Virus record (IMG/VR): IMGVR_UViG_3300026518_000006
Span: 124,001 to 188,000 of that record
Direction: 5' to 3' (one strand)
DNA length: 64,000 nucleotides
Shown: positions 1 through 34,040 of the stretch, piece by piece
How positions within the stretch are numbered: position 1 is the stretch's first letter
How the letters are laid out: each line of letters starts with the position of its first letter
Notes under the pieces: generated by a model
Seen by the model: the letters and a program-made list of their open reading frames with translations, nothing else
What the model was told of the DNA's origin: nothing
The model's database searches: none
Position numbers and translations under genes: made by a program

Positions 1-395
1 TTTTTCTTAAATCCATCTAAAATAGCGTCTGAAATCAATTTTATAGTCGTTAATTCAGGATTAATATTAACTTCCATTGAAACACCTGTATCTGTCCATT
101 TCTGTATTCTTCGTGTAACATTTATCATACTATGAGCACCGTATTGGAATTTCCCTTTATAGTACCAATATCTTGTCTTAATATAGCGTGGCAAAATCGG
201 TACACTAATATCAGCTAAAGTTTGGTAATTTAGTTTGGAGTGTGGGGGTTGCCAAGAAGCAGTAGCCCCCATCAGAATACCGCTTGATGTGTTGTGACTT
301 GCACACCCATTATCTAAGAAGTAATGGTGGTCTACCTCGACTTCAAAATCATAGGTGGGAATGGGGTCTTTTTTTGTTATTTTCTTAATTTTCAT
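1..395 (-). CDS. nrdA: Ribonucleotide reductase alpha subunit, C-terminal fragment (35-aa IntC plus C-extein), runs off the window edge
   Basis: Hand translation from ATG 395: MKIKKITKKDPIPTYDFEVEVDHHYFLDNGCASHN|TSSGILMGATASWQPP. Joined to the upstream ...LLATAPN it restores the NrdA APxxSS motif. ATGA overlap with the upstream stop. Confidence 0.9.
   Translation of the reverse strand, partial: MKIKKITKKDPIPTYDFEVEVDHHYFLDNGCASHNTSSGILMGATASWQPPHSKLNYQTLADISVPILPRYIKTRYWYYKGKFQYGAHSMINVTRRIQKWTDTGVSMEVNINPELTTIKLISDAILDGFKK
291..395 (-). other. Split intein C-half (IntC, 35 aa) of nrdA
   Basis: Block F (TYDFEV..HHYF) and block G (SHN followed by Thr+1). Confidence 0.9.
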
Positions 396-1312
396 AATAA
401 TTCCTTTAATTTATTGATTATATTTTTTAAATCTGAATTTTTGTTTATTCTGATTAATTTGTAGCCTTTTTCTAAGGCAACTTTCTCTTTCGCTTCATCA
501 TTATCGATAATTGATTGTTTATCAATTAGAAAATGGTTTACTCCTATTTCATCCTCATTATAATGATACATATACCCGTCATATTCTATTATAATTTTTT
601 TGTCCAATATTACAAAATCATAATAATATTTTCGGTCTGCTTCAACATAAAACTCTTCCATATCTTTATACCCAAAAGCGACATTCAACCCCATCCCCAA
701 ACAAAACCCCCATATAGGCAATAGAAGCTCAAGAGACTCTTTTGATGCACTCCCTTTTAATTTATTTAAAGGTGTGTATTTCCCATTATAATGTCTCAAT
801 AAAATCTCTTCATCTGATATATCAATATCATATTTTTTTCTAAAATGACTAATTATCATCTTATTGGATTGTTCGAAGTTATTTTTATAATACTTCTCGG
901 TACCTTTTTCGACACCATATCTATCGATATAACCATCTAATGTATTAGCTAATGAAACTTTTTTAGCCTTTTCAAGATATTTTTTAGTTCCTATTTCTTC
1001 ACCATACCTTGAGACGAAAGATTTCAAATCACTTGAAATTTTTCCTTTTAGTTCATTAACTTTTTCAATAGCTTCATCTTCAGAAAGATTATATCTCTCC
1101 ATTTGCTGATTAATATCATATGGATTAAACTTTCTTTTAGATTGTTTAAGGTTAAATTGTTTTCTCCCCTCTACTTCACCTAATCTGTAAATATAACTTT
1201 CTAAACTATGTCCTGTTTTTAATTTTAGTTCATTAACTTTTTCAATAGCTTCATCTTCAGAAAGATTATATCTCTCCATTTGCTGATTAATATCATATGG
1301 ATTAAATCTCAT
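392..1312 (-). mobile_element. Free-standing homing endonuclease, Vsr/DUF559-like PD-(D/E)xK C-terminal domain
   Basis: YYYDF...IIEYDGYMYH...GYKLIRI motif, N-terminal helical repeats, and position between the nrdA IntN and IntC. Confidence 0.75.
1046..1306. repeat. Two identical 84-bp direct repeats (1046-1129 and 1223-1306) inside the endonuclease gene
   Basis: Exact DNA duplication encoding FNPYDINQQMERYNLSEDEAIEKVNELK, period 177 nt. Confidence 0.95.
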
Positions 1313-1342
1313 AGCTAAATCTCCCTATATATTTAATGAGAG

Positions 1343-4300
1343 CTATTGCTTCTCATTGATATTTATAATATCATCACCCTCTTTCAATTCATCACAACGA
1401 ATCCAAATCTCTTCGCCATTTCTATAGACAAGTAATTTGTGATTGTAGGTGAATTCATAAGTATTTCCATCTTCAAATTCAATTTCTATAACAGGTTGTT
1501 TTCCGTTATACCAAATGCGGTTTACTTCACTTTCTCCGTTTAATGTAGGTACTTTTATTGCGTCTATACCTATCCATTGCGGAACATTCAACTCTTCTAT
1601 TTTTCTGTAGTCTATATTTTGTTCTTCAAGAATATCATAAATAGATTTATTGCCGTCTGTTGTTTTCATTTTATTATGACCACTTTGACAGTTTGGTGCA
1701 GTAGCCAATAATAGGAAATTTCTAATCCCTTTTTCTTGAATTTTTTTAGACATTTCAGACCACTTGAAACCATTTAGGCTCTCTTTATCAAGTTGTTTGG
1801 TATTTTTTCCGAACATTTTAGAATAATCGGCTTTATCAAATAAAGGATAAGCACCTTTTTTCTCTGCAAGTTGAACACTTCTCTCATAACAATACCAAGC
1901 GATTTTTTCGTAAACCTTTTCAAGCTCGTCTAAGTCTTCAGGCTTCTCATAAGATAATTTATTATAAGCCATCCAATCACCTGTGCCCAACACTCCAATA
2001 CCAACATTTCTAAGAAGTTTTGATGAATTTTCAGCTTCTTTTACGGGCATTGTTCCTGTTTCAATACTTGCATCCATCATATCAACAGCGTTGTAGCAAA
2101 CTCTCTTCAATAGTTTATCTTCAGGGTCGTTTACAATTAATCCCAAATTGATACTCAAAAGATTACAACTGTGGTATAGCCCATCACTTTCTGTACTCAT
2201 AACTCCATTTTTGTAGCTTTGAACCCACTCGGTAGGTGCTTTAGTAACACTAAACGACTCCGTACAATTCATAGTCATAACACCATTAAACATTAATGTA
2301 TGGTTTTTTGGTTCATTACCACAATAAGTTGCTCCTCTCAACCCTGTTCTATCTATATTTTTAACGGTAACAAATCTAATTGCACTTCTATTATATTCTC
2401 TCATAGTAGGCATAACTCTATAAGCTTTATATCCTAAATCTAATAGTTTGATGCACTCAGAACCTGCAATTAATAATCTATATAGAGGTTTAACCGTGTA
2501 TTCTTTTTTATCAGAAGACCCGTTATTTAGAGGCAATTTTCTTTCGCCTCCATTATGTACTTTTTGTACTTTAGAATTAATACCCATTTCTTGTAAGAAT
2601 AACATTAAATTATTAATGAAAATTTCATTAACAGATGCAAATTGGATGCTTTCACTGCCTTTATCGTTTGTTAGAGTACCATCACTATCCATAATACCTG
2701 CTAACCATTTTAACCGACTTTCTAAAGTGTAATCAGAAGTAGGAATAAAAAATCTATCTTTTAATAATCTTGTGTAACTAATGGTAGTTCTATTTTGGGC
2801 TTCATCTTCATTAAATGAAGTATAACCACTAAAGTTATTCACTAAAGCTCTTTTCTCGTGATACAAATAAATTCTTTGTATTCCATTGTTATCTTGAGAC
2901 CCATCCCCTGAAAAAAACCCATTCTCATAAGCCAAAGGTAGCACCTTGTCCCCACTTAAAACAGGCAAATCGAATTTGGCAAGTCTGTCACCTACACTCA
3001 ATTCTTCAGTTCTCTTAATAATTGGAGCTTTTCTGCTGTCATCCTGTACGACTAACCAACGGTGCGCTAATGTGGCATTTATCGTTTGATTATTTGATAA
3101 AGAAACTGTGACTAATTCATCATCATCACTTGTTTTGAAAAGCTCACTCATAGACCATTCGGTACCGTTCCATACTTCAATAGTTTGACCCGATACAGAT
3201 TCAATGTCCACATAACCTTGTTTGGTAAGAATTTTGGTATCACCTGATACACAAAGGTTGGCACTATTAGCGATTAAATCTTCACCTTTCAGGTAGTTAC
3301 ATAGATTTAGATTGTCTTTATGTGTAATATAAAAGTCGCCTGTTTCAACCCAAATTCTCAGAAACTCTTTCCAAAGTGCTTTTGCATTTTCCTTTTTGCA
3401 GTTTGTTAGTGTGCCTTTTTCGCATAAATCATAGATGGTTTCTTGTGCTTTATACAGCTCTTCATCAATCAAAGAAACAATATCAATCCCTGTTTTTGTT
3501 TTCACTTCATAACTATCAAAGAGATATACATCTTTGTTTTTTAAAACAGCATCCACAAAATAATCATCCACTACTACTTGTGGGAACAAGTCAAAACACT
3601 TATTTCTCAAGTCACCTTGTGTTTCGGATTTCATTTCAATAAAGCTATGAATATCACCGTGCCACCAATCCAAAGCAGGAGTAATAGCACCTTTTCGGAT
3701 TCCTCTTTGGTTTACCGCTACTGCAATATCATTGATTATTTTAGCCCATCTGATGATATTGTTGGCATTTGGGATATTGTCTGAGTACGAACCTTCAGGT
3801 CTTAAACCACCTAAATAAACTCCAATTCCGCCACCCTCTTTGGAGATTTTAGCCATATCCTGCCAAGTTTTTGTAATACTCTCAATATTGTCTAAGGTAG
3901 GAACAATAAAACAGCTACCTACATTACCACCTTCTCTTCTGAGATTTGATTTAAATGGTGTTGCTAATGAGATATACATTCTCTGTAGCATAGTGAAATA
4001 TTCTTTTGTCTTTTTAACTCTTTCACTTTCATCTTCAATGCCACCTAAAATCATAGACGAAGCCATATCAGAAAATTGAGGGTATTCAATAACTCCTCTT
4101 GAATTTTTTAGAATATACTTTGAGCGAAGACTTAACACCTGAGCAATATTCATATCAAAGTCGTACTTCGGGTTAATAGCCTTTTTGATTGTCTTTATAT
4201 CCTCTTCTGAAAAAGGCTTCATAATATCTTTTCTGTAATGATTTGTTCTGACCGCATATTTAATATACTCATCAAATTGGTCATATTCAAATTTTGTATT

Positions 4301-4573
4301 TTTATATACTTGTCTATGGAGTTGGTACATTGATAATCTACCTGCGACAATAGACATCTCAGGATGGTCTTGGTCTATCATTGATGTAGCTGTAGAAACT
4401 AATAAATCTTGAATATCAGAGGTTTTCATATTGTTTTTAAAATTCAGCGTTAGCTTTGCTTCCAACTCAAGTTGATTTTCTTTTAATCCTGTGTATGCGA
4501 ATTCAAGTTGTTTTTTAATTTTACTATTATCAAACGGTTTTTTTGAACCATCTCTTTTAATTACTGTTTTCAT
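1343..4573 (-). CDS. nrdA: Class Ia ribonucleotide reductase alpha subunit, N-terminal fragment with ATP cone, cis intein and terminal IntN
   Basis: ATP-cone start (VIKRDG), GSCF, ANL|C..N|CTE, GIGVLG, LLATAPN. Confidence 0.95.
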   Translation of the reverse strand: MKTVIKRDGSKKPFDNSKIKKQLEFAYTGLKENQLELEAKLTLNFKNNMKTSDIQDLLVSTATSMIDQDHPEMSIVAGRLSMYQLHRQVYKNTKFEYDQFDEYIKYAVRTNHYRKDIMKPFSEEDIKTIKKAINPKYDFDMNIAQVLSLRSKYILKNSRGVIEYPQFSDMASSMILGGIEDESERVKKTKEYFTMLQRMYISLATPFKSNLRREGGNVGSCFIVPTLDNIESITKTWQDMAKISKEGGGIGVYLGGLRPEGSYSDNIPNANNIIRWAKIINDIAVAVNQRGIRKGAITPALDWWHGDIHSFIEMKSETQGDLRNKCFDLFPQVVVDDYFVDAVLKNKDVYLFDSYEVKTKTGIDIVSLIDEELYKAQETIYDLCEKGTLTNCKKENAKALWKEFLRIWVETGDFYITHKDNLNLCNYLKGEDLIANSANLCVSGDTKILTKQGYVDIESVSGQTIEVWNGTEWSMSELFKTSDDDELVTVSLSNNQTINATLAHRWLVVQDDSRKAPIIKRTEELSVGDRLAKFDLPVLSGDKVLPLAYENGFFSGDGSQDNNGIQRIYLYHEKRALVNNFSGYTSFNEDEAQNRTTISYTRLLKDRFFIPTSDYTLESRLKWLAGIMDSDGTLTNDKGSESIQFASVNEIFINNLMLFLQEMGINSKVQKVHNGGERKLPLNNGSSDKKEYTVKPLYRLLIAGSECIKLLDLGYKAYRVMPTMREYNRSAIRFVTVKNIDRTGLRGATYCGNEPKNHTLMFNGVMTMNCTESFSVTKAPTEWVQSYKNGVMSTESDGLYHSCNLLSINLGLIVNDPEDKLLKRVCYNAVDMMDASIETGTMPVKEAENSSKLLRNVGIGVLGTGDWMAYNKLSYEKPEDLDELEKVYEKIAWYCYERSVQLAEKKGAYPLFDKADYSKMFGKNTKQLDKESLNGFKWSEMSKKIQEKGIRNFLLLATAPNCQSGHNKMKTTDGNKSIYDILEEQNIDYRKIEELNVPQWIGIDAIKVPTLNGESEVNRIWYNGKQPVIEIEFEDGNTYEFTYNHKLLVYRNGEEIWIRCDELKEGDDIININEKQ
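1346..1690 (-). other. Split intein N-half (IntN, 115 aa) of nrdA
   Basis: Starts CQSG after APN, block B FTYNHKLL, ends at the stop codon with no block F or G. Confidence 0.88.
2267..3253 (-). mobile_element. Cis-splicing intein (329 aa) with LAGLIDADG endonuclease, at the thiyl-radical Cys of NrdA
   Basis: CVSGDTKIL start, ATLAHRW block B, GFFSGDG and LAGIMDSDG motifs, ends NGVMTMN|C. Confidence 0.93.
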
Positions 4574-4670
4574 ATAGCCTCTTTAGTTAAGTATTTTGAT
4601 TGTATTATATAGTGGTAATTTGAAGCAAGTCTTAAAACCTATACTTTAGTACATCAAAAAGAAAGAAAAC

Positions 4671-5360
4671 CTAAACCTTTTTTAATCTGTCTACTATTAT
4701 ATTATCCATTTTGATTTTATTGTACTTCTTCATCTCATCAAAATATATATTTATTTTTTCTTTTTCAGCGGGATTGTCTATATTAGTGTATATCTCTTTT
4801 AATATATTATATTTTTCTTCCAATTTTTTATCATACTGCATCATAAAATACATAAAACTATAGCTCGTTTTCTTTTCCAGTAAAAATTTTTCTATTCTTT
4901 CTCTTAATTCAAGCGGAGTATTTTTTGAGCCGTACTCTCCGAATATATAATTTAACAGTATAGCACTATCACTGACATATCTCTTAGGTTTAGTTAGAAA
5001 GTATTCTATGTCTTTAGTGAGCTGTGTTTTTTCTTCTTCTGTGAGTTTATCTTGATTTCTTGTTTTGATGTTCATAGTCATCTCAAACACTGCATTTGGG
5101 TACAACTTCTCTATTTGTTCTTTGTGTTCTTCTATGAATTTCAGAGCATCTTCGTAGGTATTTCTTGCCTGTTCTACAACATATTCGATAGTGAAATTTT
5201 CTTTTAGCTCTTCAGTTTCGTGGTTACACTTGTTGTCAAAAGGATTAAATGGGTTGTGAATACCTATTTTTTTAAGAAAACAGTCATATTTGGCTATCAG
5301 TGGTTTAAAAGGAGTTAATAAAAATTTTGTAATTTGTATAATCTGTTCAAGCATAATCAC
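4671..5360 (-). CDS. Hypothetical protein
   Basis: 229-aa ORF on the coding strand. Confidence 0.6.
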   Translation of the reverse strand: MIMLEQIIQITKFLLTPFKPLIAKYDCFLKKIGIHNPFNPFDNKCNHETEELKENFTIEYVVEQARNTYEDALKFIEEHKEQIEKLYPNAVFEMTMNIKTRNQDKLTEEEKTQLTKDIEYFLTKPKRYVSDSAILLNYIFGEYGSKNTPLELRERIEKFLLEKKTSYSFMYFMMQYDKKLEEKYNILKEIYTNIDNPAEKEKINIYFDEMKKYNKIKMDNIIVDRLKKV

Positions 5361-5419: not shown

Positions 5420-6802
5420 TTACAGGTCATTCATTAATTTAAGGTTTGCTAAATCTTCAAGGGTTGTTTTTCCTTTGGAATCTACACCATTGTTGATGAT
5501 GACTTTATCAGGCATTTGAACAAGACCTTTTCCGTTTTTCATAGCCTCATATTTAGCTAAGTTCGTGATTTTCTTAACCTCAAGCTCCAAAATATCTTTA
5601 CGAACAGCTTCATATTTAGCTTTTTTGATTTGCGCTTCAGCAAGTCCGATATGTAGTTTGGCTTCAGCTTGATATTTAGTCGCAATTTCATTTGCCTTTT
5701 GAATAGCTTGGTTGTCTTTGGCAATCTGAAGCTCTTTCTTTTTATCAATAACCGCAAGTTTAGCCAATTTTTGTCGGTCTACAATCTCCTTTTCAGCTTT
5801 TAGTTTTGCTACTTTGACCTCTTTTTTACGCTCAATGATTTCAGCATCCGCTTTGATAAGTCTTTCTTGTTCTGCCTTTTCACGCATAGCTTGACCTTTT
5901 AGTTTAGCGGTCTTGATGTCTTCTTTTGCGTTATCTTGCTCTTGTACACTCAAGATTTTTTTAGCAACTGCTGACTTTTTAGCCACAAGAAGCTTTTCAA
6001 GAAGTGGCTCAGGAATAGGGTCAGCAAGATTTACCTGAAGTACCTTAATGCCATATTTTTCGAAAGGATTTGATGTTCTGATGATTTTGCCGTCCTTATC
6101 ACGCTTTGGCACAGCTTTCCATACCGTTACAGCTTGCTCTACAGGTTTTCCTGTAGTTTTGTCAACACCAATATCAAGTCGCCCTTTTGTAGCTTGTTCA
6201 ACCACTACTCTCTTACGCTCAGTTACATAAACGCCATTATTAACTTGGTCTTCGATTGCAGATTTAAGACCGTTTAAACCACCTTGAGTTACTTCTTCAG
6301 CTGTAAATTGTTGAGCAGTGTTGGTCGCAACATCAATCATTGTTTTTTGGTAAAGTGAATTTACCAAGTTTCTATATGAGCGAAATGATTTATCAACCAT
6401 CAAAATATGCTCGTCATCGGTAGGAAGCACAAATCTTGCTGTTAGTGGAAGTTTTGCTTCGTATGTATCTGCAAATCTAATATCGATAGGTGTATTGACC
6501 GATGTAAATTTCCCTTTATCGCCACCGTCATTTGTAAACGCTACAGTAGTATCATCCTTATAAGTTCTTTCTGTACCAATCAGAATTGGACTAAAATACC
6601 AATCAGGACCGTGATATACTGTTGTTGTACCTGTAGCTTTGTTTTGATAAACATCTGTATACCCTAGTTCTACGGTACGAAACATCGATGACACTATCAG
6701 CACCGCTATTACACTCAATATACCGTAAATACTATACTTGATGTATTTTTTAAGCGATGATAGCTTTCCTTGTGTTCTACTGTTGTTTAGAATTTCTTCC
6801 AT
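5420..6802 (-). CDS. SPFH/band-7 (prohibitin-like) membrane protein
   Basis: N-terminal TM helix, V..GY..V.Q motif, YGIKVLQVNL, long Ala/Lys/Glu coiled coil. Confidence 0.8.
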   Translation of the reverse strand: MEEILNNSRTQGKLSSLKKYIKYSIYGILSVIAVLIVSSMFRTVELGYTDVYQNKATGTTTVYHGPDWYFSPILIGTERTYKDDTTVAFTNDGGDKGKFTSVNTPIDIRFADTYEAKLPLTARFVLPTDDEHILMVDKSFRSYRNLVNSLYQKTMIDVATNTAQQFTAEEVTQGGLNGLKSAIEDQVNNGVYVTERKRVVVEQATKGRLDIGVDKTTGKPVEQAVTVWKAVPKRDKDGKIIRTSNPFEKYGIKVLQVNLADPIPEPLLEKLLVAKKSAVAKKILSVQEQDNAKEDIKTAKLKGQAMREKAEQERLIKADAEIIERKKEVKVAKLKAEKEIVDRQKLAKLAVIDKKKELQIAKDNQAIQKANEIATKYQAEAKLHIGLAEAQIKKAKYEAVRKDILELEVKKITNLAKYEAMKNGKGLVQMPDKVIINNGVDSKGKTTLEDLANLKLMNDL

Positions 6803-17355: not shown

Positions 17356-18477
17356 TTAATCAAAAGCACCACTATTAATTTTTCGCATAGCATCAAAAGC
17401 TACATCAGGGTCATATGAACTCATATTTTGAAGCATACGGTCTTTCGTATAATCATCACTGCCATCATCAAACCCACCATCTGTGTCTAATAATGAATAA
17501 TAATCTGCTGTTTTTACACCATCTTCATCTTCTTCAGTATCTAAATCTATATTCTTTCTTAATACATCTAAAAATAAATCAAAATCATCAAACGCTTTTA
17601 TGTGCATAAATGGGGCAAAAATAATAGCTAAACTCATTATCATATCATCGTGATAGCCCTCTTCAGCTTCATATTTTTTCTTCACATTATCGCTTTTAAT
17701 GAAGTTAAAAAATTCGTTGATAGTATCTCTGTCTTGAACTATTAATTTCCCCTCTTCTATAAAAATCTTCAACATATTGATAATAAGAGGTCTTGATTTT
17801 ACAGTAGTTCTAAATCCGTAATATTTTTTATATTTTTTGTCTCCGTCATCTCTATCCCGATACATATTTGGATATTCGTAGTTGAGGTATAAAATATCGG
17901 CTACACTTTGTCCTGCACCTTCATTATTTTCGATAACTAAAAAAGCTTCATTATAATAAAGCCCTAATGTTTCAATATATTCAGGCATAACAAGATAATC
18001 TACATCTAATTTAGCTGAAGCAACCTGTATAAATGGAAATTTTGTAATATCAACCACTTGAATACTAAAACTATCTATCCCTTCTTTTGATGGGTCAATA
18101 CCAATGATGTAATTATGTCCTTTTATAGGTTTTTCATAAATATTAATCCCGCTGAATATGGTATCTTTAGCGACAGGTTCTTGTGGCACCATTAACTTCA
18201 ATCTTTCTGTACTAATCAGTGTTGAGGCAGAGCCAAGAAATTCACACGCCTCTGTTTGTGCGAAGAATTGTGCTCCATTTCTTGCTATTGTTTGTTTCTT
18301 GTACTCTTGAGGGGATAAAGGATTTCCTTTTTTATCAAAATGAGGAACTTCAGTCCAACTCGCTGTTACCAATCGGTGCCCGCTTTTGGACTTAAAAATA
18401 TTATATTTTACTGTATATGTCCCGTCAGGGTTTTTAATTATCTCTTTAATATCATTTATAGATTTTATTTTAAGCAT
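17356..18477 (-). CDS. gp17: Large terminase fragment 4 (nuclease domain)
   Basis: CEFLGSASTLI, IIGIDPS, IENN, HDDMIMSLAI. Confidence 0.92.
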   Translation of the reverse strand: MLKIKSINDIKEIIKNPDGTYTVKYNIFKSKSGHRLVTASWTEVPHFDKKGNPLSPQEYKKQTIARNGAQFFAQTEACEFLGSASTLISTERLKLMVPQEPVAKDTIFSGINIYEKPIKGHNYIIGIDPSKEGIDSFSIQVVDITKFPFIQVASAKLDVDYLVMPEYIETLGLYYNEAFLVIENNEGAGQSVADILYLNYEYPNMYRDRDDGDKKYKKYYGFRTTVKSRPLIINMLKIFIEEGKLIVQDRDTINEFFNFIKSDNVKKKYEAEEGYHDDMIMSLAIIFAPFMHIKAFDDFDLFLDVLRKNIDLDTEEDEDGVKTADYYSLLDTDGGFDDGSDDYTKDRMLQNMSSYDPDVAFDAMRKINSGAFD

Positions 18478-19100
18478 TATTCAACATCCATTATAATAGG
18501 GTGACGCTCTATAGTATGAAATTCTTTATAAATTTCTTCCAACGAAAATTCACCTAAAGCATCAATTTCGATTGTATCATCTTCAGACAACACAACTTCT
18601 TCGTCTTTAAAATTGATATTTTTAGCACCCTCCACTAGTTGAAAAAAGTGGTTCATACCATTAGCTGTAGAAGTGTTTATAACCTGTTTAAATATCAATG
18701 AGTTCATAGTAGGTATTACAGCATCGATAAAGTCATCCCAATCTTTTGATTTTATATAACCCGCTTCGTCAGTGTAGATAATATTGCAATTATGAGACTC
18801 AATCATATTTGTTGTATATGTGTGCCCCCTTACACCCACAACATCATAAAACTCAAAAGCCCCCTCTTTGTGAGTAATATTTTTTATTACACCATTGGAT
18901 ATTTTATCACCAACTTTTAAATTTTTGGCTTGTCTAAAAATTTTTCCTGATTTTGATTTTCCTACTAATAATCTATGGTCTTCGGTACATTTTAAACTAC
19001 TATTGTCAGTTTCAATATAGTAAAGTATTTTTTTATTAATTCGTCTAACTGTTTCAAAATCTTCATACCCTCTCTCAGTTTTTATCATATAATCGTTCAT
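18477..19100 (-). CDS. gp17: Large terminase fragment 3: IntC2 (104 aa, 18789-19100) plus Walker B and coupling motif
   Basis: CTEDH block B, ends ESHN|CNIIYTDEAG, STANGMNHF. Confidence 0.9.
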   Translation of the reverse strand: MNDYMIKTERGYEDFETVRRINKKILYYIETDNSSLKCTEDHRLLVGKSKSGKIFRQAKNLKVGDKISNGVIKNITHKEGAFEFYDVVGVRGHTYTTNMIESHNCNIIYTDEAGYIKSKDWDDFIDAVIPTMNSLIFKQVINTSTANGMNHFFQLVEGAKNINFKDEEVVLSEDDTIEIDALGEFSLEEIYKEFHTIERHPIIMDVE

Positions 19101-19971
19101 AAAAAGCTCCTATTAGATTTTCTTTTGTTATAGATGATTTCCAATTTTTAGATGAATTTAATTCTGATGGCAACATCTCTAAATTAATGATATTTCCTAT
19201 TATATAAGGAGGGATACCTTCCTTAAACCCCATAATTTTTGAAAATTTATGGTCTATATTATAAAAACCTTTTCCTCTCCCTCTTTTGTTATAGTTCGTC
19301 AAGGTATATAAATCTTGAGCTTTAGTTACTTTATCCACTTCTCTACAGTATAATTCATAATCTGAGAGTTCACTTTCTTTTACCCAAAGTCCGTTAATTT
19401 CCTTTAATTTTCTATAATTTTTTACTCTACATTTTATTTTCCCACAAGTAGGTCTATACCCTTGTCCATATGATAAATATTTTCTTGGTTTACAACAATA
19501 TTCACATTTTGGCTCTTCTTTCATATCATTCATAAATAAATATATATTTTTAGATATATTATTTGTTATTTTAGGTATAGAACCATAGATATCCATTATT
19601 AACTGATTTTTATTATGGTAGTTATCGGGTTTTATTTTGGATATGTAATTTTTAAGGTCATTTACGGATTTATCGAGTTTATTTTCAAGTTTCGGTGCAT
19701 TTAAATCATCCATTTGGCATTTGTGTGAGCAATATTTAGCATAACCATCTGATATATTTTTAAATTTTGTTTTTGCACCACATTTACATATTGGGGGTAT
19801 TAAAATGTTATGTTTTATAATATATAGCAACTCATTCAATTTATTTGTAGTTGGTGGAATTTTTGCATTTTCTAATAATTTTTGATAGTGAATTTTATAG
19901 AACTCAGATTTTGATGTTAATTTTCCAAAGCTTTCAAACTCTAACAACTCAATAATTGACAGTTCTTTCAT
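19075..19971 (-). mobile_element. Free-standing HNH homing endonuclease with Zn-ribbon repeats
   Basis: NIDHKFS...NLEML..LNSSKN motif and two PxC..C..F..GY..C repeats. Lies between IntN2 and IntC2. Confidence 0.75.
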
Positions 19972-20659
19972 ATAACTCTTTTATAGTAATTTTTTCTTCT
20001 TTTAATGTTTTTTTATTTATAACTTCTACCGTAGTATCAGGAGATACACAAGTATATCCACGAAAGCTGTCACTTGATGGGCTGTCTGTCATAATCCTTG
20101 TGCCGTTTTCAAACTCGATATTTGATTTGTTCCACACCGATATCCCATTCATAAGCCATATTGGAAGCTCTAAGAAAACCTTTTTAATTTTATCCAATAC
20201 TTCACGGGCTGTGGACGGTTTATTGGCTACAATCCCAATATTTATAGCAGTATCGTGAAACATAGCTCTCCACAACAGATAGTTGCCCACTGTAACCGTA
20301 TTATGGCTAAGAATATCATTAGTGTAATAAAGATTATCCCCACTAACACTTAAATCATACATTTCTTCTGAGTACCCTAAATCTATTACTTTCGTTACTT
20401 TTGAATCGCCTTTTTTTGTATTTAAGATTTTTCCTAAACTATTTTTTGCAAATACTTCTTGAAAGTCATTAGTAATTAAAATATGGTCATCAGCACACTT
20501 TATTTTTAGTCCATTTTGCAGGTGCACTTCATATAATCTGTATTTAACAGTTTTATTAGTTTTAGTTATATCTCTCCAACCATCGTGGCTTTCGACTTGC
20601 CAATCATTGACATCAAATTGTTCTGTAAATTTTCGGTTTATTTTATCTGATAGTTTCAT
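19949..20659 (-). CDS. gp17: Large terminase fragment 2: IntC1 (120 aa), 83-aa extein, IntN2 (33 aa)
   Basis: CADDH block B, LSHN|TVTVGN...DSFRGYT|CVSPDTTVEV. Confidence 0.92.
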   Translation of the reverse strand: MKLSDKINRKFTEQFDVNDWQVESHDGWRDITKTNKTVKYRLYEVHLQNGLKIKCADDHILITNDFQEVFAKNSLGKILNTKKGDSKVTKVIDLGYSEEMYDLSVSGDNLYYTNDILSHNTVTVGNYLLWRAMFHDTAINIGIVANKPSTAREVLDKIKKVFLELPIWLMNGISVWNKSNIEFENGTRIMTDSPSSDSFRGYTCVSPDTTVEVINKKTLKEEKITIKELYERTVNY

Positions 20660-21918
20660 TATTTTAGCCCATATTTATTTTTAAAATTTGTAGTGAAATT
20701 TTCCAAATCTTTTTTATTTATTTTTAATATGTTTTGTAATATATCTTCATCAAAACATTCAGTAGAAGAAAAATGATTATACTTCTTCGTTACTCTATTA
20801 TTCTTCGATAAAATATATTGCTCTTTATAGAAAGCTTTATCGTAAGGCATTTTCTCTGTATAGATAACATTATATGATAATCCGTTTTTGACTTCAAATA
20901 TTGACTGACTCCCCCACCTTGATATAATTCCTTGAGATGTTATGCCTATTTTATAAAAAACATCTCTTGAATTATAAAACTTAATATAATAAAGAATAGT
21001 TTCTGTATTTTTTGCCCAATAGTTTTTCTTTCTTATCAAATCTATACTCCATCCTATGTGCTCACCTTTCCCTTTATCTCTATTAATTCTCTCTAATTCT
21101 TCTTTTGGTTTTGATTGTAGAGTTTTTTGCCACTTTTGTTGTCTTTGATTAAATATAATTAATCCTTCTTCACCATATCTCTCAATACATTTCTCTAAAG
21201 AAAAAGTGCTTTGTCGTTCTGATAATAATCTTTTAGCTTCATTTTCATTATAACCTCGTTTTAAATAATACTCTAAAGTACAATCATTATTACCATTTTC
21301 CTTATTCGATTTCGATATTTTAGAATGAACTTCATTTATTTTTTGCTGTTTTTCTTCCTCTGTTAAACCTTGATATTTTATAAAGTTTTTAGAGCCACTT
21401 GAATACTTTCCACCGTGATTTTTGGCAGGATTATTATCTGAAGTGAACCCCTTTACTTGTTTGTCAATATTATGTAGTCCATATCGTACAATAGTTCCTA
21501 ATAGTCCATTTGATTTCTTTACATTTAATATATATCGTTGTCTTTCAAGGAACTTTGTTTTCATCCCATCAGATATAAACTTAGCAAAATTATCTATCTT
21601 CATATATTCGCCTTTATTTAAATAATATAGGCACTTTTTTAACTCTCTGAATTGAGATAATGTAGGAAATTTATTTAAGTTACTATAAAAGGATTTTTGA
21701 TTGAATAACCACCTTAAATCTTTTTCTTTATATGGTTTACCTTTGTTATCCAATTTAATTTTCAATTTAATTTTCAATTTATCTATTTCATTTTTATGAA
21801 CTAAATTAGTTGTTTTATTATAAGGAATGTATTCAACTTCTGAAAAGTCTATATATGGTATTTTTGAAACTCTTATATAGTTTGGCGAATAATGAAGTCT
21901 TCTGTTTACTTTGCTCAT
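20659..21918 (-). mobile_element. Free-standing homing endonuclease, GIY-YIG/T5orf172-like C-terminal domain
   Basis: LYYIKF...FYKIGIT....R...EQ motif and RYGEEG repeat. Lies between IntN1 and IntC1. Confidence 0.7.
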
Positions 21919-30885: not shown

Positions 30886-31800
30886 TTAAATATTGGGTAG
30901 AGTGACTTCTTTAGTTAAAATGGGGTGTCCTTCTGATACATAGTACATTTCTCTTTCATAAAAGTGTTTTAAACTATAGGTGTCTTTAACATAAGTGAAC
31001 ACATCTACTAAATCAAAAACATATACATTATCACCTTTTTCTTTATGTAACCTCATAATTCTACCCATAGCTTGAAGTACTAGAGTATATGATTTTGTTG
31101 AGCTCAAAAACACAAGGTTCTTTAGTCTTGGGATGTTGATACCTGTACTCAAAACATTATATTGTCCTATTACAATAGCATTCTCACAAGTATTAAGGTA
31201 AAGTCTAATCTGCTCTCTAACACTTGATTTTGTGTTTCCACTCATAAAGAAAACATTGTGTTTTTTCATAAACTCAAAGTCAGATTTTCTTTTATTGGTA
31301 AGCTTCTCACCTGTTAAACTTTCAAAAGTATCTTCCCCGTGTGCAGTGACAGCGTATAAGGCTACTGTAACCCCTTTAAGTTTTTCTAAAAACTGTTTTA
31401 CAAACAACTGTCTTGATTTGCTTTCTCTTATGAATTTTGTTTCTTCCTGATACTTCATACCACTTTTGGTTTGGTTTCGTGGATGTGTTAAGAAAATAGC
31501 CATAATAGTTGTGTCTGTTAATAAGCCCATCTCAATTAGTTGTCTTGCATTAACAATTCTTTCGGGTTTTCCCAATGCTTGCTCTAATAACATAGCATCT
31601 TCTTCTATGATAGGCATAGAGCCAGTCATACCCAATTTTATCTCACAAGGTTGCTTTAATATAGACTGAAGTACTTCAGCTTTAGCTTGGTGACAATTAG
31701 ACACTAAAATGTTATTGGCATAATAATTGTGGTTGTTTTCTATATGTAAATTATAAGTATCACCTTGAAACTCAACCTTTTTTATGGACTTTATCTTCAT
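30886..31800 (-). CDS. uvsW: UvsW helicase C-terminal fragment (35-aa IntC at 31696-31800 plus extein)
   Basis: MKIKSIKKV...ILVSN|CHQAK, GMTGS, STGINIP, QAMGRIMR. Confidence 0.92.
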   Translation of the reverse strand: MKIKSIKKVEFQGDTYNLHIENNHNYYANNILVSNCHQAKAEVLQSILKQPCEIKLGMTGSMPIIEEDAMLLEQALGKPERIVNARQLIEMGLLTDTTIMAIFLTHPRNQTKSGMKYQEETKFIRESKSRQLFVKQFLEKLKGVTVALYAVTAHGEDTFESLTGEKLTNKRKSDFEFMKKHNVFFMSGNTKSSVREQIRLYLNTCENAIVIGQYNVLSTGINIPRLKNLVFLSSTKSYTLVLQAMGRIMRLHKEKGDNVYVFDLVDVFTYVKDTYSLKHFYEREMYYVSEGHPILTKEVTLPNI

Positions 31801-32857
31801 TCTTACCCTTTAGTTTTTCCAATTTTTGTATCGCATTTGTTACTTTATCGGTATTTTCATCATCCAATTTAATATTAGCGAATAACTCTTTTATATTGCT
31901 TAAATTTTTAATCAGATAATCCTCTGTTATAATTTTATATGAGTAATTATTTTCTTCACACCAAACCAAAGCACTATCTTCTTTTGCTATATTTCGAGCA
32001 TTGAGTATTAGTGATTTTGGTTTTATTTCGAATATTATATTATGTTTGTTATCTGTAAAATCCACAATATATGTGTGTATACTATCTTCAAATAAATATG
32101 GTATTCTAGTGGTTTCATATAGTGTATTTGGGTTCAACAAATAAAACATAAATTCCCAAGAGCTCCTAAAATTAAAATTGCCAAATTTTATTCTGCTTCT
32201 CGACCAAGAGTTGGTAATACACGGGGTAAATTCTCCGCTTGCAATTTTTGATTTCATTATTATAGAGTTATGTTTGGCTATCTTCTTTTTTGTCTCTTTT
32301 GACATTTTATGAGCAGGGTTGTTTTTTCTCATCCGCTCAGAACATAATAATTGTCTACATTTTTCATTACAGGTTTTTCTATTCAATGATGAAGATTGTG
32401 CCCTTTTAATTTTATTACCACAATAATCGCAATATAGTGGGTCTATTTCATCAATATATTCTATTCTTGACAATCTAAGCAAGTTCGGAAATTTTAAATC
32501 TGCTCCAACAAAAAGTAAATATTTCATATAATTATCATTATCATCTATAAATGAATATTTAGGGGTAGTTGTTGATTTATACTTTGGTAAATTATTTTTT
32601 AATGTTTCGTATGTAACATTTTCTACAATCCTACCACTATAATCCCAATTTCCAAGAACTAGCTTTAAGTCATAAATGTCATCTTTAAAAGCATTGAATA
32701 TAAAGGCATATTTTATCGTTTTGTTGCCTTTATATTCATAAAAGAGCGTCCTTAAATCTTCACGATATATTAAAATTTGTTTTATTATTTTTGATTTTAA
32801 TGGTTTTGACAGCTTGTTTGGATTAAGTGTTTTTAAATATTTTTTATAATCATCCAT
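31772..32857 (-). mobile_element. Free-standing endonuclease, TnsA-like PD-(D/E)xK domain
   Basis: FRSSWE...YE..IPY...YIVDF...EIKP, with CDYC..C..C and NUMOD3-like segments. Lies between the uvsW IntN and IntC. Confidence 0.75.
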
Positions 32858-32860
32858 ATC

Positions 32861-33817
32861 TTATTTATAGGGCAGAAGCTCATCAGTTAACACCAACTCG
32901 TCTACTCTAACATAACCTCGTTGTGTAAATACCTTATGATTACCTGTGATATATAGCTTTCCGTTATCTGTTTCTATCTCATACATCTGTTCGTTTGATA
33001 TATTTTTATGTGTTTTTAGTACTTGATTGTATTCATTTTGTTTGGTAGTTTCATTGTATGTCATAACTAAATCTCCTTCAGTTATACTGCCGATTGGCAC
33101 ATCTCCATTAATAGTTTTAATCAAAGTATCACCTCTTAGACACTCATCAACCAAGATAGCGTCATATAGTCTTACATCTTTCATAACTTTGTTCAAGCTT
33201 TGCCAAGTGGTGATTATATAGGGTTTATCCAACGCTTTATCATCATTCTCACCACCAATTAGTTTAATACTGTCAAGCATCTCTTTTGGGGCATTGTAAT
33301 CTTTAAAATCTTGGAACATTTGAGATGTTAATCCGATTGTGGGGACTACTAATATAGTCGGGATATCGTGGTCGAAAAAGTATTTTAAAACCAAATAAGC
33401 AACCATTGACTTGCCACCACCTGTGGCAATAATATCCAATTTATTTCTACTTCTAATAAGGCTTAGAAAGCCTTTTAGTTGGTGTTTATAGGGGGTAAAG
33501 GGTAGGGTAGGGATAACGCTTTTCAAGAAGTCTATAGCATCATCACGCTCTAATGGCGGTAATAATTCAACTTTATCGAATTCAATATTTTCTATAAGAC
33601 GCTCTTTAAAACCTTTTTCAACTTTGAAATATTTACCATCTTTATAATTCTGAGCTTGATAAAATCGAGTATATCCATCATCTTTGCCCATTTGAACTCT
33701 AGGTTCGTGCTCTGAATTTAGTCTTTTGGCTCTAAGTAGCTTATCAATCTTGAATACAGTGTCTCTATTATTAGTGAATAGGTTAAGATGATGTTTCGCC
33801 TCATTTAATATTGTCAT
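32861..33817 (-). CDS. uvsW: UvsW helicase N-terminal fragment plus IntN (93 aa, 32864-33142)
   Basis: PYKHQ, ATGGGKS, VVPT, TTWQSL, LVDE|CLRGDT, ITGNHKV block B. Confidence 0.92.
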   Translation of the reverse strand: MTILNEAKHHLNLFTNNRDTVFKIDKLLRAKRLNSEHEPRVQMGKDDGYTRFYQAQNYKDGKYFKVEKGFKERLIENIEFDKVELLPPLERDDAIDFLKSVIPTLPFTPYKHQLKGFLSLIRSRNKLDIIATGGGKSMVAYLVLKYFFDHDIPTILVVPTIGLTSQMFQDFKDYNAPKEMLDSIKLIGGENDDKALDKPYIITTWQSLNKVMKDVRLYDAILVDECLRGDTLIKTINGDVPIGSITEGDLVMTYNETTKQNEYNQVLKTHKNISNEQMYEIETDNGKLYITGNHKVFTQRGYVRVDELVLTDELLPYK

Positions 33818-33827
33818 ATAGTTTCCA

Positions 33828-34040
33828 TTATATTGTGTATTCGGGATTATCCTCAAGCCATTTAATATAAGGCTTTTTTAGTACGATTTCGGTAGACCCT
33901 CTTTTTCGTATATTTCCTTTGATTTTTACTTTATTGTCGATAACATCAGTAACTACACCTTCATTAAACCAGTAGCCGTCTTTGCCTGTGTATAAAACAG
34001 TATCGCCAATCTTTACATTAATCCCGAAATAGTCTTTCAT
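33828..34040 (-). CDS. Small SH3-like protein with tag PEYTI
   Basis: DYFG..VKIGDTV pattern. Confidence 0.6.
   Translation of the reverse strand: MKDYFGINVKIGDTVLYTGKDGYWFNEGVVTDVIDNKVKIKGNIRKRGSTEIVLKKPYIKWLEDNPEYTI

What the first reader, a model, noticed from the sequence alone, without database searches (positions are those of the whole stretch)
1..4573. Ribonucleotide reductase needs both a cis splice and a trans splice
Seen: a 329-aa LAGLIDADG intein at ANL|CTE, a 115-aa IntN after LATAPN, a free-standing nuclease gene, then a 35-aa IntC ending HN|T. Established: CTE carries the radical Cys of class I RNR, and fractured genes with split inteins around a Vsr-like endonuclease are known from metagenomes. 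Inference: active NrdA requires two splicing events at two active-site loops, and the split intein uses Thr as the +1 nucleophile.
Basis: partly seen in the sequence, partly recalled or inferred. Interest (0 to 1): 0.6.

Follow-up and report, generated by a model that had tools for sequence, protein, structure and literature searches.

The report
Phage RNR gene with two inteins
A hydrothermal-vent phage encodes its only ribonucleotide reductase catalytic subunit as two genes interrupted by two protein-splicing elements, one whole and one split around a nuclease gene. It is a clean new example of the "fractured gene" arrangement already described from ocean metagenomes.

Summary
On the minus strand lie NrdA residues 1-440, a 329-aa LAGLIDADG intein at SANL|CTES, NrdA residues 770-961, and a 115-aa N-intein after LLATAPN. 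A 306-aa free-standing nuclease gene follows, then a 35-aa C-intein ending SHN|T fused to the 121-aa NrdA C-terminus, which runs 75 nt plus its stop codon off the window.

Close relatives (72-75% identical) lack both elements and read ...SANLCTESFS... and ...LLATAPNTSSGILMGATAS... uninterrupted. A near-identical phage lacks only the LAGLIDADG intein, precisely. Nearly all differences between the two genomes fall in the 1.45 kb next to that insertion site, which marks recent intein gain or loss by recombination.

The split halves match a contiguous 153-aa mini-intein at the same loop of Campylobacter phage NrdA, and they are predicted to dock (ipSAE 0.84, best control 0.01). The nuclease has a Vsr/EDxHD fold (Z 10.3 to Vsr).

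Splicing itself was not shown. The kind is known: fractured genes (Dassa 2009), many-intein RNR genes, and split dnaE genes with multiple inteins in Trichodesmium. What is new is modest: the split-intein site in NrdA differs from the published fractured NrdA loci, and it is combined with a cis intein. Verdict: a new member of a known kind.

The parts
3254..4573 (-). nrdA extein 1 (aa 1-440): ATP-cone, all-alpha domain and first part of the barrel; ends ...IANSANL, carrying the Asn of the N-x-C-x-E motif
   Evidence: dN/dS is 0.057 against the intein-less allele in L020.
2267..3253 (-). Intein 1: a 329-aa contiguous LAGLIDADG intein running CVSGD...VMTMN. It has block B T-L-A-H and two LAGLIDADG motifs (..GFFSGDG.., ..IMDSDGT..). 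The penultimate residue is Met, not His.
   Evidence: It is precisely absent from P0015/L020 and from P0016-18. Alleles 40-45% identical lie in NrdA of 342 phage records.
1691..2266 (-). nrdA extein 2 (aa 770-961): starts CTES (radical Cys and Glu), contains ..YHSCNL.., ends ..RNFLLLATAPN
1343..1690 (-). IntN: the 115-aa N-terminal half of the split intein (CQSGHNK..., block B T-Y-N-H), with its stop codon at 1345-1343
   Evidence: It is 47% identical to residues 1-113 of the contiguous 153-aa mini-intein of Campylobacter phage PC14 NrdA. Docking prediction.
1313..1342 (-). 30-nt spacer between the IntN stop and the nuclease start, with GGGAG 8 nt before the ATG
   Evidence: No hairpin better than shuffles was found (z 0.13).
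392..1312 (-). Free-standing homing-endonuclease gene, 306 aa. The N-terminal part is helical repeats, including a 59-codon in-frame duplication (91-nt repeats at 1039-1129 and 1216-1306). The C-terminal Vsr-like/EDxHD nuclease domain is aa 187-306 (window 395-754), with D232, E243, D245, H250 and D272.
291..395 (-). IntC: the 35-aa C-terminal half of the split intein (MKIKKITK...YDFEVEVDHHYFLDNGCASHN). Its ATG overlaps the nuclease stop codon (ATGA), and AAGGA lies 6 nt upstream.
1..290 (-). nrdA extein 3, 121 aa in all. It starts TSSGILMGATAS and contains ..AVYYSL.. and the C-terminal CTDC. It continues 75 nt plus the stop codon beyond the window's first base.

Best explanation
The phage's only RNR catalytic subunit is made as two polypeptides.

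The first is a 1076-aa precursor. It carries a contiguous LAGLIDADG intein exactly at the thiyl-radical Cys, which is the +1 Cys, and it ends in the N-half of a second, split intein.

The second is a 156-aa polypeptide. It begins with the 35-aa C-half of the split intein.

Mature NrdA of about 753 aa is produced by two class-1 splicing reactions.

1. Cis-splicing uses Cys441, Asn769 and Cys770. It joins ...SANL to CTES...
2. The IntN and IntC halves associate and trans-splice, using Cys962 of the precursor and Asn35/Thr36 of the second polypeptide. This joins ...ATAPN to TSSG...

Each intein is kept mobile by a homing endonuclease. Intein 1 has a nested LAGLIDADG domain. The split intein has a free-standing Vsr-like (EDxHD) enzyme encoded between its halves, in the fractured-gene arrangement.

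Shown here: the anatomy, the precise boundaries, conservation of the catalytic blocks, homology of the halves to a contiguous intein, the nuclease fold, purifying selection on the exteins, and a recombination tract next to intein 1.

Inferred: that both splicing reactions and both nucleases are active.
For: Boundaries and colinearity:
- P0016-18 (753 aa, 72-75% identical) are colinear and lack both insertions at exactly the predicted junctions.
- P0015/L020 is 97% identical and lacks only residues 441-769.

Catalytic blocks:
- Intein 1 has Cys1, T-x-x-H, the terminal Asn and a +1 Cys.
- The split intein has Cys1, T-Y-N-H, the YDFEVE..HHYF block F, H-N and a +1 Thr.

Homology and docking of the halves:
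- IntN and IntC align end to end with the contiguous 153-aa mini-intein at the same loop in Campylobacter phage PC14 NrdA (47% and 46% identity).
- The same loop is fractured in Klebsiella phage phiKp_21, with an HNH gene between the halves, and in IMG/VR loci L005 and L008-L011.
- The complex prediction gave ipSAE 0.84 against a best control of 0.01. The runs agreed in at least 97% of contacts, and partner pLDDT was at least 80. That mark was reached by 51 of 78 solved complexes and by 2 of 108 mismatched pairs. The pass may partly reflect likeness to solved split inteins.

Nuclease:
- The nuclease domain matches Vsr (1cw0_A, Z 10.3, rmsd 2.5 Å over 106 residues) and I-Bth0305I (3r3p, Z 8.5).
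- The D/E/H/D positions are conserved.

Selection and need:
- Extein 1 has dN/dS 0.057 between the intein-plus and intein-minus alleles.
- No other RNR catalytic gene is found in the 235.6-kb record.

Mobility:
- 124 of 131 mismatches between the two near-identical genomes lie in the 1.45 kb on the 5' side of the intein-1 site. Only 2 lie in the 990 nt on the 3' side.

Reality and context:
- The arrangement recurs in vent metagenome contigs from three studies, one of which may be the source sample.
- No Rfam family is found in window 1-5000.
- The same genome has at least two more fractured essential genes, a helicase and the terminase.
Against: - No protein or RNA data exist. No RNA run holds the locus.
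- Intein 1 lacks the usual penultimate His (it has Met). Its alleles share this or end in Gly-Gln, so it looks like a family trait, but it could slow C-terminal cleavage.
- The record is only 86% complete, so a second RNR cannot be excluded.
- Fractured NrdA can work without splicing, as in Aeh1 phage (PMC3045599).
- The nuclease carries a recent internal duplication, and its activity is untested.
Confidence: 0.8

Rival explanations
1. The two NrdA polypeptides assemble non-covalently. The intein halves serve only as association domains without ligating, as the Aeh1 phage split NrdA assembles without an intein. The cis intein may still splice.
For: There is a precedent for a functional fragmented NrdA without splicing (PMC3045599, listed). 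The docking prediction speaks only to association, not to chemistry.
Against: All residues needed for the chemistry are retained in both halves: Cys1, T-x-x-H, block F, H-N and Thr+1. They are also conserved across distant alleles. The break falls in a conserved loop of the catalytic barrel, next to residues that are continuous in every uninterrupted homologue.
Confidence: 0.07
2. The gene is decaying. nrdA has been overrun by selfish elements, is no longer functional, and the phage relies on host RNR.
For: Dwivedi et al. 2013 (PMC3653736) suggested that Campylobacter phage nrdA genes with inteins may be degenerating. CPt10 nrdA is annotated as disrupted. In locus L007 the IntN is itself interrupted.
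Against: There are no frameshifts or stops in any extein. dN/dS is 0.057. The catalytic N-x-C-x-E, the second Cys, the YY pair and the C-terminal CxxC are all present. nrdB lies intact downstream. Independent samples carry the same open frames.
Confidence: 0.05
3. The interruption is removed at RNA level (a group I or II intron carrying the nuclease ORF), or it is an assembly artefact.
For: Phage RNR genes often carry group I introns. The nuclease repeat does break short-read contigs.
Against: No Rfam family is found at E <= 1 in window 1-5000. The flanks of the gap encode in-frame intein halves homologous to a contiguous intein. Single contigs in independent runs span 1277-3678, and a source-sample contig spans 1277-4600. 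The same order is seen in L020.
Confidence: 0.01

Closest known systems
Fractured genes: split intein halves flanking a free-standing Vsr-like or GIY-YIG homing endonuclease (Dassa et al. 2009, PMC2677866), including loci NrdA-1 to NrdA-7
   Same: The gene order is the same: N-extein with IntN, then the nuclease gene, then IntC with C-extein. The nuclease family is the same (Vsr-like). The nuclease 3' end overlaps the IntC start, and the host enzyme is NrdA from uncultured phages.
   Different: The published NrdA loci are all fractured directly N-terminal to the thiyl-radical Cys. Here that site holds a contiguous LAGLIDADG intein, and the fracture is about 190 residues further on, in the ..APN|TSS.. 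loop. The overlap is only the 4-nt ATGA, against 6-69 bp reported. No upstream hairpin was found.
Contiguous mini-intein in NrdA of Campylobacter phages (CP220, PC14/NCTC12673 group), and the unannotated fractured nrdA of Klebsiella jumbo phage phiKp_21/KP13-7
   Same: The same loop of NrdA is used (APTA|C...SHN|TSG and IMPGE|C...SHN|TSS). The intein family is homologous (40-47% identity to IntN), and Thr is the +1 residue.
   Different: The Campylobacter element is unsplit, with no nuclease inside. The Klebsiella phage has an HNH nuclease between the halves, not a Vsr-like one, and has no intein at the radical Cys. An ungapped alignment puts the insertion here one residue closer to the conserved Pro, so the register is ambiguous by one.
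Genes with several inteins: Trichodesmium erythraeum split dnaE genes encoding multiple inteins, and its RNR gene with four inteins (Liu & Yang 2003 and Liu et al. 2003, cited in PMC2874743)
   Same: One essential replication or nucleotide-metabolism gene needs more than one protein-splicing event. In dnaE, by my recollection of the paper beyond its title, that includes both cis- and trans-splicing.
   Different: Those are cellular (cyanobacterial) genes. The dnaE halves are unlinked in the genome with no nuclease gene between them. The RNR inteins there are all contiguous.
I-Bth0305I, prototype of the EDxHD homing endonuclease family (PMC3239194; PDB 3r3p)
   Same: The C-terminal Vsr-fold nuclease domain has the conserved Asp / acidic / His / Asp positions, and the N-terminal DNA-binding region is repetitive and helical.
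   Different: I-Bth0305I is encoded in a group I intron of recA. Sequence similarity to the nuclease here is too low for phmmer. The N-terminal repeats here (YGxExGTxKY and a duplicated 59-residue module) were not matched to NUMOD motifs.

Membership tests
Class 1 intein (contiguous, LAGLIDADG-containing), intein 1 | An in-frame insertion that is absent from orthologues, with the extein sequence continuous across the site | tested here: met
   Residues 441-769 are absent from P0015-P0018, leaving SANL|CTESFS. The DNA is absent from L020.
Class 1 intein (contiguous, LAGLIDADG-containing), intein 1 | Nucleophile at position 1 (Cys/Ser), block B T-x-x-H, C-terminal Asn (or Gln), and a Cys/Ser/Thr at +1 | tested here: met
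   Cys441, T-L-A-H, Asn769 and Cys770 are present and invariant among four alleles. The penultimate His is replaced by Met, as in the Acinetobacter phage AM24 allele.
Class 1 intein (contiguous, LAGLIDADG-containing), intein 1 | Two LAGLIDADG motifs with acidic catalytic residues | tested here: met
   GFFSGDG (Asp557) and IMDSDGT (Asp629/631) are conserved in the alleles. Pfam LAGLIDADG_3 matches at E 2e-10.
Class 1 intein (contiguous, LAGLIDADG-containing), intein 1 | Self-splicing activity | not testable with these tools
   This needs expression and a western blot or mass spectrometry.
Naturally split intein in a fractured gene (Dassa 2009) | IntN at the C-terminus of the upstream ORF and IntC at the N-terminus of the downstream ORF, together making one complete HINT domain | tested here: met
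   The 115-aa and 35-aa halves align to residues 1-113 and 117-153 of a contiguous 153-aa homologue. Pfam Intein_splicing matches.
Naturally split intein in a fractured gene (Dassa 2009) | A free-standing homing-endonuclease gene between the halves, on the same strand | tested here: met
   A 306-aa ORF at 1312-395 has a Vsr-like fold.
Naturally split intein in a fractured gene (Dassa 2009) | The halves associate | tested here: met
   Prediction only. ipSAE was 0.84 against a best control of 0.01, the runs agreed in at least 97% of contacts, and partner pLDDT was at least 80. The mark was reached by 51 of 78 solved complexes and 2 of 108 mismatches.
Naturally split intein in a fractured gene (Dassa 2009) | Trans-splicing gives a ligated host protein | not testable with these tools
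   No proteomic or expression data are available. Uninterrupted relatives show the expected junction APNTSSG.
Naturally split intein in a fractured gene (Dassa 2009) | Regulatory hairpin or promoter upstream of the endonuclease ORF | tested here: not met
   The fold z-score was 0.13. Promoter-like sites number 28, against 23.7 +/- 4.1 in shuffles. This is an accessory feature, not a defining one.
EDxHD / Vsr-like homing endonuclease | Vsr-type nuclease fold | tested here: met
   An AF2 model (mean pLDDT 79.7) was searched against the PDB. Matches were 1cw0_A at Z 10.3, 3hrl at 9.5, 1vsr at 9.3 and 3r3p at 8.5, over residues 187-306. Foldseek probabilities were 0.98-1.00, but E-values were above 0.01 for the whole-length model.
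EDxHD / Vsr-like homing endonuclease | Conserved catalytic Asp, acidic residue, His and Asp (Vsr D51, position 62, H69, D97) | tested here: met
   D232, E243, H250 and D272 are present. E243, G246, H250 and K275 are nearly invariant in 13 homologues. The mapping to Vsr numbering is by motif order as described in PMC3239194, not by a residue-level superposition.
EDxHD / Vsr-like homing endonuclease | [quoted passage not shown] | not testable with these tools
   This needs an in vitro cleavage assay on an uninterrupted nrdA target.
Class Ia ribonucleotide reductase alpha subunit (NrdA) | ATP-cone, all-alpha domain and ten-stranded barrel, with N-x-C-x-E, the paired redox Cys, the YY pair and a C-terminal Cys pair; nrdB adjacent | tested here: met
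   HMMER alignments to solved NrdA structures are. GSCF, NL|CTE, HSCNL, AVYYSL and CTDC are visible. nrdB lies downstream. E. coli residue numbers are quoted from memory.

The most novel reading that the evidence does not exclude
Maturation of the phage's only RNR might be a conditional checkpoint rather than a neutral parasite burden. Both inteins use Cys1, and the cis intein sits on the thiyl-radical Cys itself. Splicing, and so dNTP supply, could therefore be gated by redox state or temperature in the vent host. The split intein would add a requirement for balanced expression of the two fragments. In addition, the site-2 cassette co-occurs with unrelated site-1 split inteins in relatives (L005, L010/L011). 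That would make these naturally orthogonal split-intein pairs that assemble a three-piece enzyme.
Probability: 0.1. Interest if true: 0.65.

Novelty: new member of a known kind. Interest (0 to 1): 0.38.

Why it matters
It adds a well-delimited natural split intein (115 + 35 aa, Cys1/Thr+1) at an NrdA site that the original fractured-gene survey did not report.

Both reference alleles are in hand: relatives with neither intein, and a near-identical relative lacking only the cis intein. The pair of near-identical genomes gives a rare natural before-and-after view of intein homing, with a one-sided 1.45-kb recombination tract.

The same genome and its relatives carry several more fractured essential genes. 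That makes this vent phage group a compact source of new split inteins and EDxHD nucleases for protein-ligation and genome-engineering tools.

It does not change how inteins are understood.

Tried and rejected
- Group I/II intron or other RNA element: the Rfam scan of window 1-5000 at E <= 1 found nothing.
- Regulatory hairpin before the nuclease, as reported for fractured genes: the fold is no better than shuffles (z 0.13). Promoter and terminator scans are not above shuffles.
- Pattern-based searches of IMG/VR with extein 1 and with intein 1 found no relatives. The word-based protein search then found them.
- Sequence search of the nuclease against PDB chains gave only noise. Pfam gave only a sub-threshold DUF559 hit (E 0.026). 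The fold comparison settled the question.
- Expression evidence: no RNA run holds the locus. The laid runs are DNA contigs only and cannot show transcripts. No intein-less joint was seen in those four runs.
- The large representative-protein search was not used, since the word search and family scans left nothing open.
The exteins were searched and aligned separately by reference, and uninterrupted natural homologues served in place of the spliced model.
Full report
**What is there**

The window is bases 124001-188000 of a 235,593-bp IMG/VR virus record, estimated 86% complete. All features of the finding lie on the minus strand.

ORF 4573-1343 encodes 1076 aa. Its parts were located by string positions:
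- extein 1: residues 1-440, ending ...IANSANL
- intein 1: residues 441-769, 329 aa, running CVSGDTKIL...NGVMTMN
- extein 2: residues 770-961, running CTESFS...RNFLLLATAPN
- IntN: residues 962-1076, 115 aa, running CQSGHNKMKT...ININEKQ, then a stop codon

After a 30-nt spacer carrying GGGAG comes a 306-aa ORF at 1312-392. Its stop codon overlaps, as ATGA, the start of the next ORF. That ORF begins with a 35-aa IntC (MKIKKITK...DNGCASHN) followed by TSSGILMGATAS....

This last ORF is cut by the window edge. In the parent record it is 156 aa and ends ...AVYYSLTIDGKKETNCTDCSN. A T5orf172 nuclease-like gene and nrdB follow it.

**Are these true insertions?**

A word-based protein search with extein 1 alone found hundreds of relatives. 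In the alignment:
- Three 753-aa proteins (P0016-18, 72-75% identical overall) run straight through both sites. They read ...LIANSANLCTESFSITK... and ...RNFLLLATAPNTSSGILMGATAS...
- A 747-aa protein (P0015, 97% identical) lacks residues 441-769 exactly but keeps an identical IntN.

Pseudomonas phage Milchi NrdA also reads ...APNTSSS... at the second site. Natural uninterrupted homologues served that purpose.

**The host enzyme**

- Pfam finds ATP-cone, Ribonuc_red_lgN (just below its cut-off) and Ribonuc_red_lgC.
- HMMER aligns the exteins and P0016 with solved class Ia alpha subunits.
- Intein 1 separates the Asn from the Cys of the N-x-C-x-E motif. That Cys is the thiyl-radical Cys, Cys439 in E. 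coli numbering (from memory).
- The split intein lies in the loop after the conserved ...LLA(L/T)(M/A)P. In E. coli-type sequences this loop reads P-S-E-T-S-S and, as I recall it, contacts the substrate phosphates.
- An ungapped alignment places the insertion here one residue nearer the Pro than in the Klebsiella and Campylobacter phage alleles. The register is uncertain by one.
- The three exteins each carry residues that must come together: GSCF in the first; CTE and HSCNL in the second; the YY pair and the C-terminal CxxC in the third.
- No other RNR catalytic gene was found in the record, either by Ribonuc_red_lgC or by NRDD.

**Intein 1**

It has Cys1, block B T-L-A-H, two LAGLIDADG motifs with their Asp residues, a terminal Asn and Cys+1. 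All of these are invariant in alleles from Acinetobacter, Vibrio and Staphylococcus phage NrdA.

342 phage records carry a homologue at 40-45% identity. Dassa et al. call this the commonest intein site in RNRs. The penultimate His is replaced by Met. The Acinetobacter allele shares ...TMN, and the other two end ...TGQ, so the family as a whole does without that His.

**Evidence of recent mobility**

L020 is a 21-kb ENA metagenome scaffold carrying P0015. The same gene also sits on a contig from a Logan run, L021. L020 is about 99.8-99.9% identical to this genome over most of the aligned region, apart from the tract described below. It lacks the 987 nt of intein 1.

Of 131 mismatches in the 7.3 kb upstream block, 124 fall between window 3253 and 4700. 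That is the 1.45 kb immediately 5' of the insertion site, in gene orientation. Only two fall in the 990 nt on the other side.

This is the pattern expected if the intein was gained, or precisely lost, by recombination with a diverged allele, with a one-sided co-conversion tract. The direction cannot be decided without an outgroup. Within the tract, dN/dS is 0.057, so both alleles encode a protein under strong constraint.

**The split intein**

- IntN is 47% identical to residues 1-113, and IntC 46% identical to residues 117-153, of the contiguous 153-aa mini-intein at the same loop of Campylobacter phage PC14 NrdA. The break therefore falls at the usual endonuclease-insertion point.
- Cys1, T-Y-N-H, block F (YDFEVEVDHHYF) and H-N|T are intact.
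- Klebsiella jumbo phage phiKp_21 has the same fracture (IMPGE|CQSW...; an HNH gene...VSHN|TSSQ), annotated only as hypothetical proteins.
- IMG/VR loci show the same family with Thr+1 or Ser+1. It occurs unsplit (L006), split without a nuclease (L005), and split with a 498-500-aa Vsr-like nuclease homologous to the one here (L008-L011).
- L005 and L010/L011 also carry a split intein at or next to the radical Cys. Their NrdA is encoded in three pieces.
- P0036 shows a third site..YHS|CLTGD.
- A complex prediction for residues 957-1076 with the first 42 residues of the downstream ORF gave ipSAE 0.84 against a best control of 0.01. The runs agreed in at least 97% of contacts, and partner pLDDT was at least 80. 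That mark was reached by 51 of 78 solved complexes and 2 of 108 mismatched pairs. Because split-intein complexes have been solved, the pass shows likeness to them rather than proof of binding.

**The nuclease**

Pfam gives only a sub-threshold DUF559 hit. PHROGs gives phrog_22677 and an endonuclease family.

Thirteen homologues were aligned and used for an AlphaFold2 model with mean pLDDT 79.7. Residues 187-306 superpose as follows:
- E. coli Vsr: 1cw0_A, Z 10.3, rmsd 2.5 Å, 106 residues
- A DUF559 protein: 3hrl, Z 9.5
- The I-Bth0305I catalytic domain: 3r3p, Z 8.5

Foldseek on the whole model ranked the same entries with probability 0.98-1.00 but weak E-values.

D232, E243, D245, H250 and D272 occupy the order of the EDxHD positions described for I-Bth0305I. 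The N-terminal 185 residues are helical repeats. They include a 59-codon in-frame duplication, seen as 91-nt repeats at 98% identity. This duplication breaks short-read contigs and is a gap of Ns in L020.

**Alternatives**

- RNA-level removal is unsupported, with no Rfam hit.
- An assembly artefact is excluded. Contigs from an independent study span 1277-3678, and others cross each intein-1 junction.
- Non-covalent assembly without ligation, as in Aeh1 phage (PMC3045599), cannot be excluded by computation. It is hard to square with full retention of the splicing residues across distant alleles.
- Gene decay is contradicted by the open frames, the low dN/dS and the intact catalytic motifs.

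**Comparison with what is known**

- The arrangement is the fractured-gene architecture of Dassa et al. 2009. It differs in the NrdA site used and in sharing the gene with a cis intein.
- Genes with several inteins are on record for Trichodesmium: split dnaE genes encoding multiple inteins, and an RNR gene with four inteins (references).
- Thr is one of the three canonical +1 residues.
- Inteins in Campylobacter phage nrdA have been noted before.

I therefore file this as a new member of a known kind. Its useful extras are the polymorphic pair of genomes and the richness of fractured genes in this phage group, which comes from hydrothermal vent metagenomes in three studies.

**Limits**

No expression or protein evidence exists. 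E. coli residue numbers and the roles of the loop residues are from memory. The direction of the intein-1 event is undetermined.

Noticed in passing
window 30886-33856 (minus strand): A second fractured gene. An SF2 helicase (ResIII/DEAD, then Helicase_C) is split at ..ILVDE|CLRGD.. and ..ILVSN|CHQAK by a split intein, with a 361-aa TnsA-like nuclease ORF (31772-32857) between the halves.
   Followed up: partly
window 17356-21918 (minus strand): The terminase large-subunit region is encoded in several consecutive ORFs that carry intein pieces. ORF 19949-20659 has ..ILSHN|T and later ..GYT|CVSPD. ORF 18477-19100 has a block-B-like motif and ..ESHN|C. ORF 17356-18477 matches Terminase_6C. An HNH-like ORF (19075-19971) and a 419-aa ORF (20659-21918) are interleaved. 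One intein seems to be split unusually close to its N-terminus.
   Followed up: partly
L001 518-1381 (just outside the window, between the nrdA C-fragment and nrdB): A 287-aa free-standing T5orf172/MUG113 nuclease-like gene. Its N-terminal YGxELGTQKW repeats resemble the repeats of the Vsr-like nuclease, which suggests a shared DNA-binding module between two nuclease families.
   Followed up: partly
window 1039-1129 and 1216-1306: A 91-nt direct repeat (98% identical, 177 nt apart) duplicates 59 codons in frame inside the nuclease gene. Short-read contigs break here, and the relative L020 has a scaffold gap at this spot.
   Followed up: yes
L005, L010, L011 (IMG/VR contigs); P0036: Relatives encode NrdA in three pieces, with two different split inteins. 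Site 1 carries a small ORF or a GIY-YIG gene. Site 2 carries no nuclease or a Vsr-like one. P0036 carries a split intein at a third site..YHS|CLTGD, on the second redox Cys.
   Followed up: partly
L007 4692-6698: In this contig the site-2 IntN is itself interrupted, with two ORFs each holding part of it. This may be a decaying or doubly invaded copy.
   Followed up: no
window 3253-4700 versus L020: Sequence divergence between two otherwise near-identical phage genomes is confined to the 1.45 kb on one side of the intein-1 insertion site (124 of 131 mismatches). It extends a little past the nrdA start codon.
   Followed up: yes
window 5420-6802 (minus strand): A 460-aa protein with an SPFH/Band-7 domain and a long Lys/Glu-rich coiled-coil tail is encoded just upstream of nrdA. 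This is unusual cargo for a phage.
   Followed up: no
L002 (Campylobacter phage PC14) 175-5940: The PC14 nrdA reading frame starts only at the region after the radical Cys and is flanked by three large 'Hef' homing-endonuclease genes. The N-terminal part of nrdA must lie elsewhere or be missing.
   Followed up: no
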